Shown one piece after another: positions 51,746 to 54,700 of a DNA stretch of 64,000 nucleotides (the first letter of the stretch is position 1; each line of letters begins with the position of its first letter). Origin of the DNA: Saccostrea cucullata (Eukaryota); contig NW_026934971.1 in the NCBI RefSeq assembly GCF_032062105.1, forward strand, positions 434,001 to 498,000, in the 5' to 3' direction. The position numbers were made by a program, and so were the translations under genes. The notes under the pieces are model-generated. The model was given only the letters and a program-made list of their open reading frames with translations, made no database searches and was not told the origin of the DNA.

Positions 51746-54700
51746 ATGGTAAAAGAATATGGTATACGAGCGTACAAAGCAATTCAGGACTATTTCTCCC
51801 CAGAACCGAAAAACCTGGAATTCCAAAAGGGTGATGATGTTACCCATGTTAAGGTCTTAAACAAAGAATGGGCTTTAGGACGAAATAAGAGAACTAAGAA
51901 AACAGGCTGCTTCCCAATATCGTTCATTGAATATGATAAATCTCTTTGGAATCGGCTTTCTTTTAACCAGAAACCAAAAATTCCAAAGACCTCACATCGA
52001 ACAACTGTTATAGAAACGGCTGATTACAGTGAAAGCGACGATGAAGAGATGACCATGACCAGTGAAACGCAGAAAACATTACCAGCTAAAGACGAACTAT
52101 TTCCGAGTCATGTAACCAATTTAACAAAACTAATAAAAGCTAAATCATACCACGGAAAGGCTAAAGAAAAGAAGTACGAGTATACAATGAATGCAGAGAT
52201 ATTGCAGAAAAATACCCGTACTCTGATAGACGAGCTCAAGTTAAGGCTTCAGTCAAAAAATCCTACTCGATCAATGAGTTTCCGTACTCAGTCTCTCATA
52301 CGAAGGATAGTTGTGGCGGTTTGTGGTGTTTTGTTAGGAGCTATTCTTTGTGGCGCTCTTTTCTCCATCTGTGTTTTCAGCTTCGGTTATTCATATAAAG
52401 TTTCAGGCATTGTCACAGGTTCAGTGTTTCTTTTGGTTCTTATTGGAGTTGGCGGAAGTCGATTTCTAAGTTGCTGTCTGCTTCTTGTTGTTCCCTCTTT
52501 ATTCACGTCACAAGGTAGATCGTTAGCCCTAGCAGCCATATTTATCTTACTAATGGCGGGTCCAGGAACAAATGTCGTCAAGAATACAGTGGAAATATCG
52601 AGGTGCTTGGCATGTGTGGCCGACTTGATCCAGAATCAGCTATTGCAACTTGCAAAACAAATCAAAGCTCCTTTCGATCGCATCGCTGCAGCGCTGAGAG
52701 ATGTGTTTCAAAGAGTTCTTAGTGGTCTGCAGGAAGTTATAGATACCATAGATGCTGTGGCCACCAAAGTACAATCCTTCTTGAAAAAAGTGAAAGAAAT
52801 CGCCTCAAAGATTACTGGTGTTTTCACTGTAAGTGATTTACGATTGCATATTATGATTTCAGGAAAAAATATCTATTAAAAATGAAATACACATATGCAT
52901 TTCTACAATGTTATAGTAAATATACATAATTATACCTCAAATAAGTATAAATAAATAAGATCTTTTTTTTAAAAAAAAAAACACATGAACTTACTTTTGT
53001 TTTCAATGCACATTCGAGTAAATGATTAACATCATATATATGTTTATCTGTTTTGAAAAATAAAAGTCATTTACTACAGGATTGTGCAGCAACTATGGAA
53101 AAAGCAAAAGGTGAATGTGAATCAGCGATAGGAAAAGCAGAAACAGCATGTGACGACGCACTGAAGGCAGCGGAAGAATGGCTGAAAAAAGCCGCAGAGA
53201 AAATAATCAGCCCGTTCAAAAAGGTTGCGAGTCTCTGGGGGAAAAGACGTAAGCGTGCTCTCGGTATATCACACTCAAGCCAAACAAACAGAACAGTCTC
53301 ACAGAAGTATAAAATACCACATTCAAGCCAGACAAACAGAACAGCCATATTGAAGGACAGAGTACCACACTCAAGCCAGACAAACAGAACAGTCATATTG
53401 AAGGACAGAGTACCACACTCAAACCAGACAAACAGAACAGTCATCGGGATGGAAAACACATCACTCAAAAGTCGATCAGACAGAATGCTCATTCAGAGGG
53501 AGAGAATATTACAGTCAAGTCAAAAAAACAAAACGACCATCGGGAGGCAAGTGGTTGACATGATTCCAAACACTGATCTTACTGACAGGAAAGAGGGATA
53601 TAGTCAATCATTCGACATTTTACCTTTCGAGCCAAGAAACAACAGTATATCGTCACAAATGATAGCGAGTTCTTGGTCTGAGGTTCCCATTTCCTCAGAA
53701 AAACAAAGGACAAATAGAAGGTATGAACATGTCTTTTATCGATATACCACAGAAATTTGATAAAATATTGAATTTATTCTAATAATAGCTAAATTTACAT
53801 AAATTTTTACAGCTTTACTAATTATAATTATATATGTACATATCACAAGACTTCGTCTAACTTTTTTCAGTAAGATTGACTTTAATTAACTATTTTGCAC
53901 ACAGGAAAAATGGCCATAGTTTATCTTAACATTTTTGTTACTTGTATTGACATGAAGTTTTTTTTAATTCGTCCGAAATGAGATACTAACCGCTGTATAG
54001 TACATGTACATCGATAAATAAATTGGTGAATTTTCTTTTACAGTGTGTGGTATTTTTTGGGCGATGAGGTTCCTTTTGTATTTGAAGAAAGAGTTGCCAG
54101 GTAATCAGCTTTATAAATCATTTCAAATTAAATTATTACTATTTGAAATTAGAGCAAAATAAAGAGTGTTATAGTCCACATTTTTGCATTAATTTCTTCT
54201 GAGAAATCAGAAATTTTTTTCTTTACATTAAAAAAAAATGAAGTCCTTTTGAATTGCATGACCGAAATTTGTCATCGCATATTTGAAAATCAATCATGTC
54301 AAAATCTTTCTTTTTATTTTCAGGAGAAAACGCTCGATCTGCAGTGTTCTTGGAGCTGTTGATGTTGTTTGCAATGTCGTCGATATTCCAGGATCCATAT
54401 GCAAGGCCATCAGTTTTGCTTCAAATGGGTTAGAAAACGCAGCACAGTCTGCAATGAACGAATTTCAAAACCTGAAAAGCGAATTCGTTTTTGGTTTCAA
54501 TGCTTCTTTTGATATAGACAACAATATAAATTCTTCAAAGTCTGCATCACAAATTGTCGACCAGGTCCTTGCCGATATTTCTAGTAAAGTGTCAAATATA
54601 TTTAAAATATCGAGTTTCATCAGCCAGGCTCTAGGTGTCACTGTCTTTTTCCTTTTCCTCAAAGCTGTTATTTACATGACTCGATACATGAAGCAGGATT

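What the first reader, a model, noticed from the sequence alone, without database searches (positions are those of the whole stretch)
53080..54420. DC-STAMP/DCST-like fusion-family protein with a double furin-flanked, excisable glycopeptide in its ectodomain
Seen: the large extracellular loop has three spaced Cys (C-x10-C-x10-C), then GKRRKR|ALG (ending 53256), a ~158-aa low-complexity insert with 16-aa repeats bearing N-glycosylation sequons, then NRRRKR|SIC (formed across the splice junction, ending 54333), then three more Cys (C-x9-C-x9-C). Established: DCST1/2, Drosophila sneaky and C. elegans SPE-42 are needed for fertilization and have a Cys-rich loop; R-X-K/R-R is the furin consensus; RSV F is primed by excision of a glycopeptide between two furin sites. 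Inference: furin removes a glycan-shield propeptide, leaving two halves possibly disulfide-linked, which would be a proteolytic priming switch in a cellular fusion-associated protein.
Basis: partly seen in the sequence, partly recalled or inferred. Interest (0 to 1): 0.85.

Follow-up and report, generated by a model that had tools for sequence, protein, structure and literature searches.

The report
Furin-capped mollusc DCST fusion-family protein
An oyster relative of the sperm-egg fusion proteins DCST1/2 carries, at the tip of its long extracellular stalk, a variable peptide bracketed by two protease-cut signals kept from oysters to limpets, which suggests this protein is matured or switched on by cutting, something I found no report of in this family.

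Summary
Real and conserved, with two corrections. The gene (oyster, 1020 aa, four exons) encodes SH3, six membrane helices, a DC_STAMP domain and a RING-like tail. Site 1 fits R-X-K/R-R in 15/15 genes from 11 bivalve and gastropod species, site 2 in 13/15, while the insert (16-177 aa) does not align. None of 67 short-tipped relatives has such a site. AlphaFold models of two orthologs place both sites in a disordered loop at the stalk's distal end, between cysteine triads whose spacings co-vary as an antiparallel disulfide ladder; this is probably the tip a 2026 preprint proposes as DCST1/2's membrane-inserting element. The glycan shield is not general: 9 sequons here, 0-3 elsewhere. The gene is neither DCST1 nor DCST2 (both lie elsewhere in this genome) but falls in a third invertebrate group. 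Cleavage is inferred (about 0.8), activation by uncapping less so (about 0.45); tissue and any fusion role are unknown. The scan had noted only the SH3 fusion, on this same window.

The parts
51746..52828 (+). Exon 1: start codon, SH3 domain, linker, three membrane helices, base of the ascending stalk helix
   Evidence: ORF; junction to exon 2 seen in contigs of two runs
51767..51934 (+). N-terminal SH3 domain (cytosolic by inference)
   Evidence: Pfam SH3_1 E=1.4e-8; also in many mollusc and brachiopod members of the group, not detected in DCST1/2 rows
52301..52582 (+). Membrane helices 1-3
   Evidence: hydropathy; helices in ortholog model
53080..53720 (+). Exon 2: Cys triad 1, helix extension, site 1, most of the insert
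53083..53151 (+). Cys triad 1 (C-x10-C-x10-C)
   Evidence: conserved in at least 90% of 78 homologs
53242..53256 (+). Furin-type site 1, KRRKR|AL, preceded by Trp-Gly
   Evidence: strict motif in 15/15 genes
53257..54333 (+). 177-aa putative excised peptide (spans two introns), S/T/R-rich, 9 N-glycan sequons, about 20 kDa before glycosylation
   Evidence: homologous loop disordered in ortholog models
53266..53444 (+). 48-nt coding tandem repeat, 3.7 copies; one further unit appears in an RNA contig
54044..54100 (+).
   Evidence: spliced contig in run X2; canonical AG/GT; same-size exon in O. edulis
54099..54333 (+). Furin-type site 2, RRKR|SI, P4 codon split by the 54101-54323 intron
   Evidence: the same phase-2 intron splits the P4 Arg in the own-genome paralog (predicted from splice signals only)
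54324..55605 (+). Exon 4: triad 2, descending stalk, helices 4-6, DC_STAMP domain, RING-like tail, stop
54340..54402 (+). Cys triad 2 (C-x9-C-x9-C)
54703..55275 (+). DC_STAMP domain PF07782, full length
55447..55563 (+). Eight-Cys RING-like cytosolic tail
   Evidence: PF26037 on orthologs

Best explanation
A six-pass DCST-family protein of a third, invertebrate group, made as a proprotein. Shown: sequence, exons, conserved motifs. Predicted: the big extracellular loop is a long antiparallel helical stalk with the insert as a disordered loop at its far end. Inferred: (1) Cys pair C1-C6, C2-C5, C3-C4 across the hairpin; (2) a furin-like convertase in the secretory pathway cuts at both R-X-K/R-R sites and releases the insert; (3) the two halves (about 47 and 48 kDa before glycosylation) stay together through the membrane and the disulfides; (4) removal uncaps the tip, leaving a helix that ends in an aromatic residue and a short hydrophobic new N-terminus where DCST1/2 have their short hydrophobic loop. 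The insert would be a built-in cap that keeps the tip inactive during biosynthesis, a job the SPARK preprint assigns to TMEM81 in vertebrates. Whether the mature tip acts in gamete fusion, somatic cell fusion or adhesion is not known.
For: Site 1 strict in 15/15 genes and site 2 in 13/15, at fixed distance (2-8 aa) before Cys 4, across oysters, mussel, pearl oyster, scallops, abalone and limpets. Inserts align no better than shuffles (z 1.5, -1.2, 0.7) while flanks are 52-70% identical among oysters. 0 of 67 short linkers have the motif. A distant own-genome paralog (26-30% identical to the oyster orthologs) has both sites around an unrelated acidic insert. Both sites lie in coil in two ortholog models. 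Conserved sequons mark the stalk as extracellular. Cys spacings co-vary symmetrically. Convertase P domains are in the genome. Tip model: PMC13192892.
Against: No protein data. Some members of the same mollusc clade have a 19-aa tip without sites (Mytilus), a longer tip without sites (P0133) or a shortened tip (Mya, Dreissena, Potamilus), so the cap is dispensable in paralogs. The helix before site 1 is no more amphipathic than the stalk. Expression is very low in the two raw-read runs, tissue unknown. The tip-insertion model for DCST1/2 is itself a prediction in a preprint, and I matched the insert position to that tip by homology of the Cys triads, not by superposing models. Tip pLDDT is below 50. 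The 15 genes share ancestry and are not independent tests.
Confidence: 0.45

Rival explanations
1. The protein is cut at both sites, but this is housekeeping maturation: the insert is a removable spacer or folding/trafficking aid that drifts freely because it is discarded, and the tip is not switched on by the cut.
For: Insert length 16-177 aa, no alignable sequence, repeat number varies; paralogs lack the insert.
Against: A purely neutral insert gives no reason to keep two sites since the bivalve-gastropod split; they must be kept because the uncut form is harmful or the cut form is needed.
Confidence: 0.25
2. Cleavage releases a bioactive peptide, or inactivates or sheds the tip, rather than activating it.
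For: Paired basic sites bracketing short peptides resemble neuropeptide precursors; Gly precedes the basic run in 9/15 genes; scallop inserts hold two Cys.
Against: The released sequence is not conserved even among oysters.
Confidence: 0.1
3. The basic runs are not cut; they bind anionic glycans or lipids, and the insert stays as an exposed, rapidly evolving recognition loop.
For: Runs of six Arg in limpets exceed what furin needs; the DCST1/2 tip is under diversifying selection (PMC13192892).
Against: The motifs keep P4 and P1 Arg, usually a small P1' residue, and a fixed position next to Cys 4; exposed extracellular R-X-K/R-R in coil is normally cut (established knowledge).
Confidence: 0.1
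4. One reading: a glycan shield removed by furin primes a fertilization fusogen, as p27 does for RSV F.
For: 9 sequons in the window insert; double sites; family role in fertilization.
Against: 0-3 sequons in 14 other genes; not a DCST1/2 ortholog; six-pass topology; no tissue evidence.
Confidence: 0.1

Closest known systems
DCST1/DCST2 (SPE-49/SPE-42, Sneaky)
   Same: Six-pass layout, DC_STAMP domain, six-Cys helical stalk, C-terminal C4C4 RING-like tail.
   Different: Separate branch; N-terminal SH3; four exons with long coding blocks; tip linker 50-214 aa with two convertase sites instead of an 8-13 aa hydrophobic loop. This genome has its own multi-exon DCST1 and DCST2 with short tips.
DCSTAMP/OCSTAMP (osteoclast and giant-cell fusion)
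   Same: PF07782 family; predicted folds overlap (TM 0.69 by the 470-aa row).
   Different: Vertebrate proteins; no sequence was retrieved, so orthology is untested.
ENaC alpha subunit
   Same: Cellular multipass protein whose ectodomain is cut twice by furin to release an inhibitory tract (PMC7452925): the closest working analogy.
   Different: Unrelated fold; ion channel; its tract has a shown inhibitory function.
RSV F with p27 (class I viral fusogen; from own knowledge)
   Same: Peptide between two furin sites; halves disulfide-linked.
   Different: RSV F is a single-pass trimer and cleavage frees a long hydrophobic fusion peptide. Here both halves are anchored and the new N-terminus is 2-8 aa from a tethered Cys. 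Weak HA2 profile hits are generic heptad matches.
Clusterin (from own knowledge)
   Same: Antiparallel helical stalk with a disulfide ladder, cut by a furin-like enzyme between two Cys clusters.
   Different: Secreted chaperone, single cut; only a weak match (E=0.011), no evidence of homology.

Membership tests
DC-STAMP-domain family (PF07782) | Full DC_STAMP domain over the curated cut-off | tested here: met
   152 bits vs cut-off 25, positions 1-191/191
DCST-type proteins | Six membrane helices with cytosolic C-terminal C4C4 RING-like domain | tested here: met
   hydropathy and 8 Cys; ortholog model; sequon pattern
DCST-type proteins | Six-Cys helical extracellular stalk | tested here: met
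DCST1 orthologs | Groups with vertebrate DCST1 and this genome's DCST1 | tested here: not met
   DCST1 clade SH-aLRT 100 excludes it
DCST2 orthologs | Groups with this genome's DCST2 and its clade | tested here: not met
   DCST2 clade SH-aLRT 97 excludes it; database name 'DCST2-like' is an automatic label; no outgroup, so a deep duplication from either lineage is not excluded
DCST1/DCST2 | Short (8-13 aa) hydrophobic tip between the Cys triads | tested here: not met
   214-aa linker
DCST1/DCST2 | Sperm expression, heterodimer, requirement for fertilization | not testable with these tools
   RNA runs carry no tissue label; depth about 1 or less
DCSTAMP/OCSTAMP orthologs | Groups with vertebrate DCSTAMP/OCSTAMP | not tested
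   no such sequence came back from the searches aimed at it or was recognised among the top 150
Furin-type convertase substrates | R-X-K/R-R in an exposed extracellular loop, conserved | tested here: met
Furin-type convertase substrates | Cleavage shown | not testable with these tools
   no protein data
Class I viral-type fusogens | Single-pass trimer; cleavage frees a long N-terminal or internal fusion peptide | tested here: not met
   six-pass; new N-terminus 2-8 aa before Cys 4; no fold match in PDB

The most novel reading that the evidence does not exclude
This group is a cell-fusion protein of non-viral origin that is armed by double furin excision at its membrane-facing tip. It would be the first DCST protein with a proteolytic on-switch, and a natural test of the proposal that the DCST stalk tip is the membrane-inserting element.
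Probability: 0.2. Interest if true: 0.9.

Novelty: new variant of a known kind. Interest (0 to 1): 0.7.

Why it matters
How DCST/DC-STAMP proteins drive membrane fusion is open; no structure is solved and the current model (PMC13192892) rests on a predicted hydrophobic tip shielded by a partner protein. A mollusc lineage that placed a removable peptide at that position gives an independent hint that tip exposure is regulated, and a simple switch (cut versus uncut) for assays. It also shows a third invertebrate DCST group, whereas Noda et al. (10.1101/2021.04.18.440256) state that invertebrates have only DCST1/2. If expressed in gametes it is a candidate for species recognition and fertility control in farmed oysters, mussels, scallops and abalone.

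Tried and rejected
Glycan shield as the conserved function: rejected (sequon counts). Special membrane-active helix before site 1: hydrophobic moment 0.57 vs stalk 0.55, no support. Amidation signal (Gly before the basic run, 9/15): left as a lead, may be a helix cap. Homology to viral fusogens: HA2 and spike hits (E about 1e-3 or worse) score like designed helical bundles, rejected; Foldseek PDB gave nothing. Paper searches for DCST plus furin, or mollusc DCST, found no description of this feature; the library lacks most subscription papers. A mussel haemocyte 'DCST2' transcript (PMC7023338) cannot be assigned to a paralog. A search aimed at vertebrate DCSTAMP/OCSTAMP did not reach them. One full alignment timed out; one search had wrong exon ends. 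By the operators' rule the spliced model was searched exon by exon only: the joined protein was built in scripts for local analysis and never sent to a search or fold tool, so the two structure models are of orthologs (O. edulis, Pecten maximus).

Full report
Gene and host. The finding lies in a + strand gene of four exons: 51746-52828, 53080-53720, 54044-54100 and 54324-55605, giving a 1020-aa open frame with canonical splice sites. Exon 1 holds an SH3 domain (E=1.4e-8) and exon 4 a full DC_STAMP domain (E=1.9e-44), followed by an eight-Cys RING-like tail. The closest proteins are 78-80% identical over exon 4 and include Crassostrea virginica XP_022322635.1 and Ostrea edulis XP_048776586.1. 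The host is therefore an oyster; equal distance to both suggests another genus such as Saccostrea (inference).

Observation. The junction is not. An RNA-type contig (run X2) joins 53720 to 54044 and 54100 to 54324; the direct junction was not seen, and exon 1 to 2 is supported in two runs. O. edulis has a 19-codon exon at the same position. Site 2 survives as VARRKR|SIC, and the insert becomes 177 aa with 9 sequons. The contigs differ from the window by roughly 4-6%, so they come from another population or a close species. Raw poly(A) runs gave depth of about 1 or less with no tissue label, so expression is real but low there.

Conservation. A whole-library search with exon 4 returned 716 relatives, of which 150 were analysed. 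The linker between the two Cys triads falls into two classes. Sixty-seven proteins have 8-19 residues, mostly hydrophobic, and none has R-X-K/R-R or even R-X-X-R (short linkers leave little room for chance motifs). The other class has 50-214 residues. In 15 such genes from 11 species (three oysters, Mytilus, Pinctada, three scallops, Haliotis, Lottia, Patella) site 1 is a strict motif in all 15 and site 2 in 13; the two others have R-X-X-R or RR. Site 2 always lies 2-8 residues before Cys 4. The peptide between is 16-177 aa and aligns no better than shuffled sequence, while its flanks are 52-70% identical among oysters. A distant paralog in this genome (contig C13172) has both sites around an acidic 70-aa insert, with the same phase-2 intron in the P4 Arg codon of site 2 (model from splice signals only). 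These genes share ancestry, so they are not 15 independent tests; the argument is persistence of the motifs while the sequence between them turned over. Sequons number 9 here, 3 and 2 in the other oysters and 0-1 elsewhere, so heavy glycosylation is a local elaboration from the repeat.

Topology and shape. Counting back from the cytosolic RING-like tail through three helices puts the loop outside, and an N-terminal SH3 with three helices agrees. Sequons are frequent in this loop and in the helix 5-6 loop (0.8-1.5 per 100 aa) and rare in the predicted cytosolic parts (0.2-0.4). AlphaFold2 on the O. edulis ortholog gives one long ascending helix, a disordered stretch covering the insert and both sites (pLDDT below 50) and a return helix. 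The Pecten ortholog, with a 26-aa insert, gives the same, plus a break in the ascending helix. Disulfides could not be read from the models. However, the Cys 2-3 and Cys 4-5 spacings change together in relatives (10/9, 3/3, 4/3, 16/13) and one has lost two of the inner cysteines, as expected for an antiparallel C1-C6, C2-C5, C3-C4 ladder. The insert thus sits beyond the last rung, at the distal end.

Family position. This genome has multi-exon DCST1 (C11044, second copy or haplotig C985) and DCST2 (C179) genes with short tips. Trees of the C-terminal half place the window gene outside both clades (support 100 and 97), in a mollusc clade (95-99) within a looser group that includes Lingula, a chiton and sea urchins (84-93; midpoint root, no outgroup). 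Many mollusc members and Lingula carry the SH3, and an ESM Atlas cluster of 80 mostly molluscan proteins matches. Furin-tipped genes occur in both gastropod and bivalve branches, which suggests origin before their split with later losses: Mytilus short-tip paralogs, one long tip without sites, and shortened tips in Mya, Dreissena and Potamilus. Repeated gain is not excluded. Noda et al. (10.1101/2021.04.18.440256) state that invertebrates have solely DCST1/2. Relation to DCSTAMP/OCSTAMP could not be tested.

Mechanism. Shown: motifs, position, conservation. Predicted: exposed disordered loop. Inferred from established convertase biology: cleavage at both sites in the secretory pathway (about 0.8); convertase genes are present. 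[quoted passage not shown] The insert occupies the homologous position, so the simplest functional reading is a built-in cap whose removal matures the tip (0.45 overall). ENaC alpha, cut twice by furin to release an inhibitory tract (PMC7452925), is the closest cellular working analogy. It is not a class I fusogen: it is six-pass, both halves are anchored, and no long fusion peptide is freed. Rivals are housekeeping removal of a spacer (0.25), a released or inactivating product (0.1), uncut polybasic loops (0.1) and the strict glycan-shield fertilization model (0.1).

Novelty. No paper found links DCST proteins to convertase processing or describes this mollusc group; databases label the proteins only as DCST2-like or SH3-containing. 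The scan's notes hold only the SH3 fusion, from this same window. Verdict: a new variant of a known family, interest 0.7. The sequence evidence is strong and the test is direct, but cleavage, tissue and any role in fusion are unshown.

Limits. Own-genome DCST1/2 rows in the tree were exon pieces joined with X. The extra exon rests on one contig plus the ortholog.

Noticed in passing
L008:3755-7269 (G000:C13172): Second gene of the same group in this genome, with both furin-type sites, an acidic 70-aa insert and a long acidic C-terminal tail; a candidate heterodimer partner by analogy to DCST1/2.
   Followed up: partly
window 53266-53444: An RNA contig (X2) appears to carry one more 48-nt unit than the window, so the glycosylated repeat varies in copy number.
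   Followed up: partly
L011 and L012 (G000:C985, C11044): Two near-identical DCST1-like loci, haplotigs or a duplication; the C985 copy has a LINE-like reverse transcriptase fragment on the opposite strand within or beside it.
   Followed up: no
proteins P0044-P0055 (Mya, Dreissena, Potamilus and unnamed relatives): Members of the same clade have symmetrically shortened stalk tips, the opposite change to the furin insert.
   Followed up: partly
window 53233-53256: Aromatic residue within three positions of the basic run in 12/15 genes and Gly directly before it in 9/15; could be an amidation signal or a helix cap.
   Followed up: partly
window 31823-36377 (- strand): Long low-complexity ORFs (1161 aa and 244 aa) rich in S, T, N, Q, K, causing the strong AT skew; unexplained, perhaps a secreted matrix protein.
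   Followed up: no
window 2123-3115 (+): 330-aa ORF that looks like a Myb/SANT-like trihelix DNA-binding protein (by eye).
   Followed up: no
window 44778-48900: Membrane J-protein-like exons on the - strand head-to-head with Rab-like GTPase exons on the + strand, just upstream of the gene.
   Followed up: no
window 51406-51553: Short dispersed repeat about 200 nt upstream of the start codon, abundant in RNA runs; a similar segment lies at about 50223-50350 in inverted orientation (by eye).
   Followed up: no
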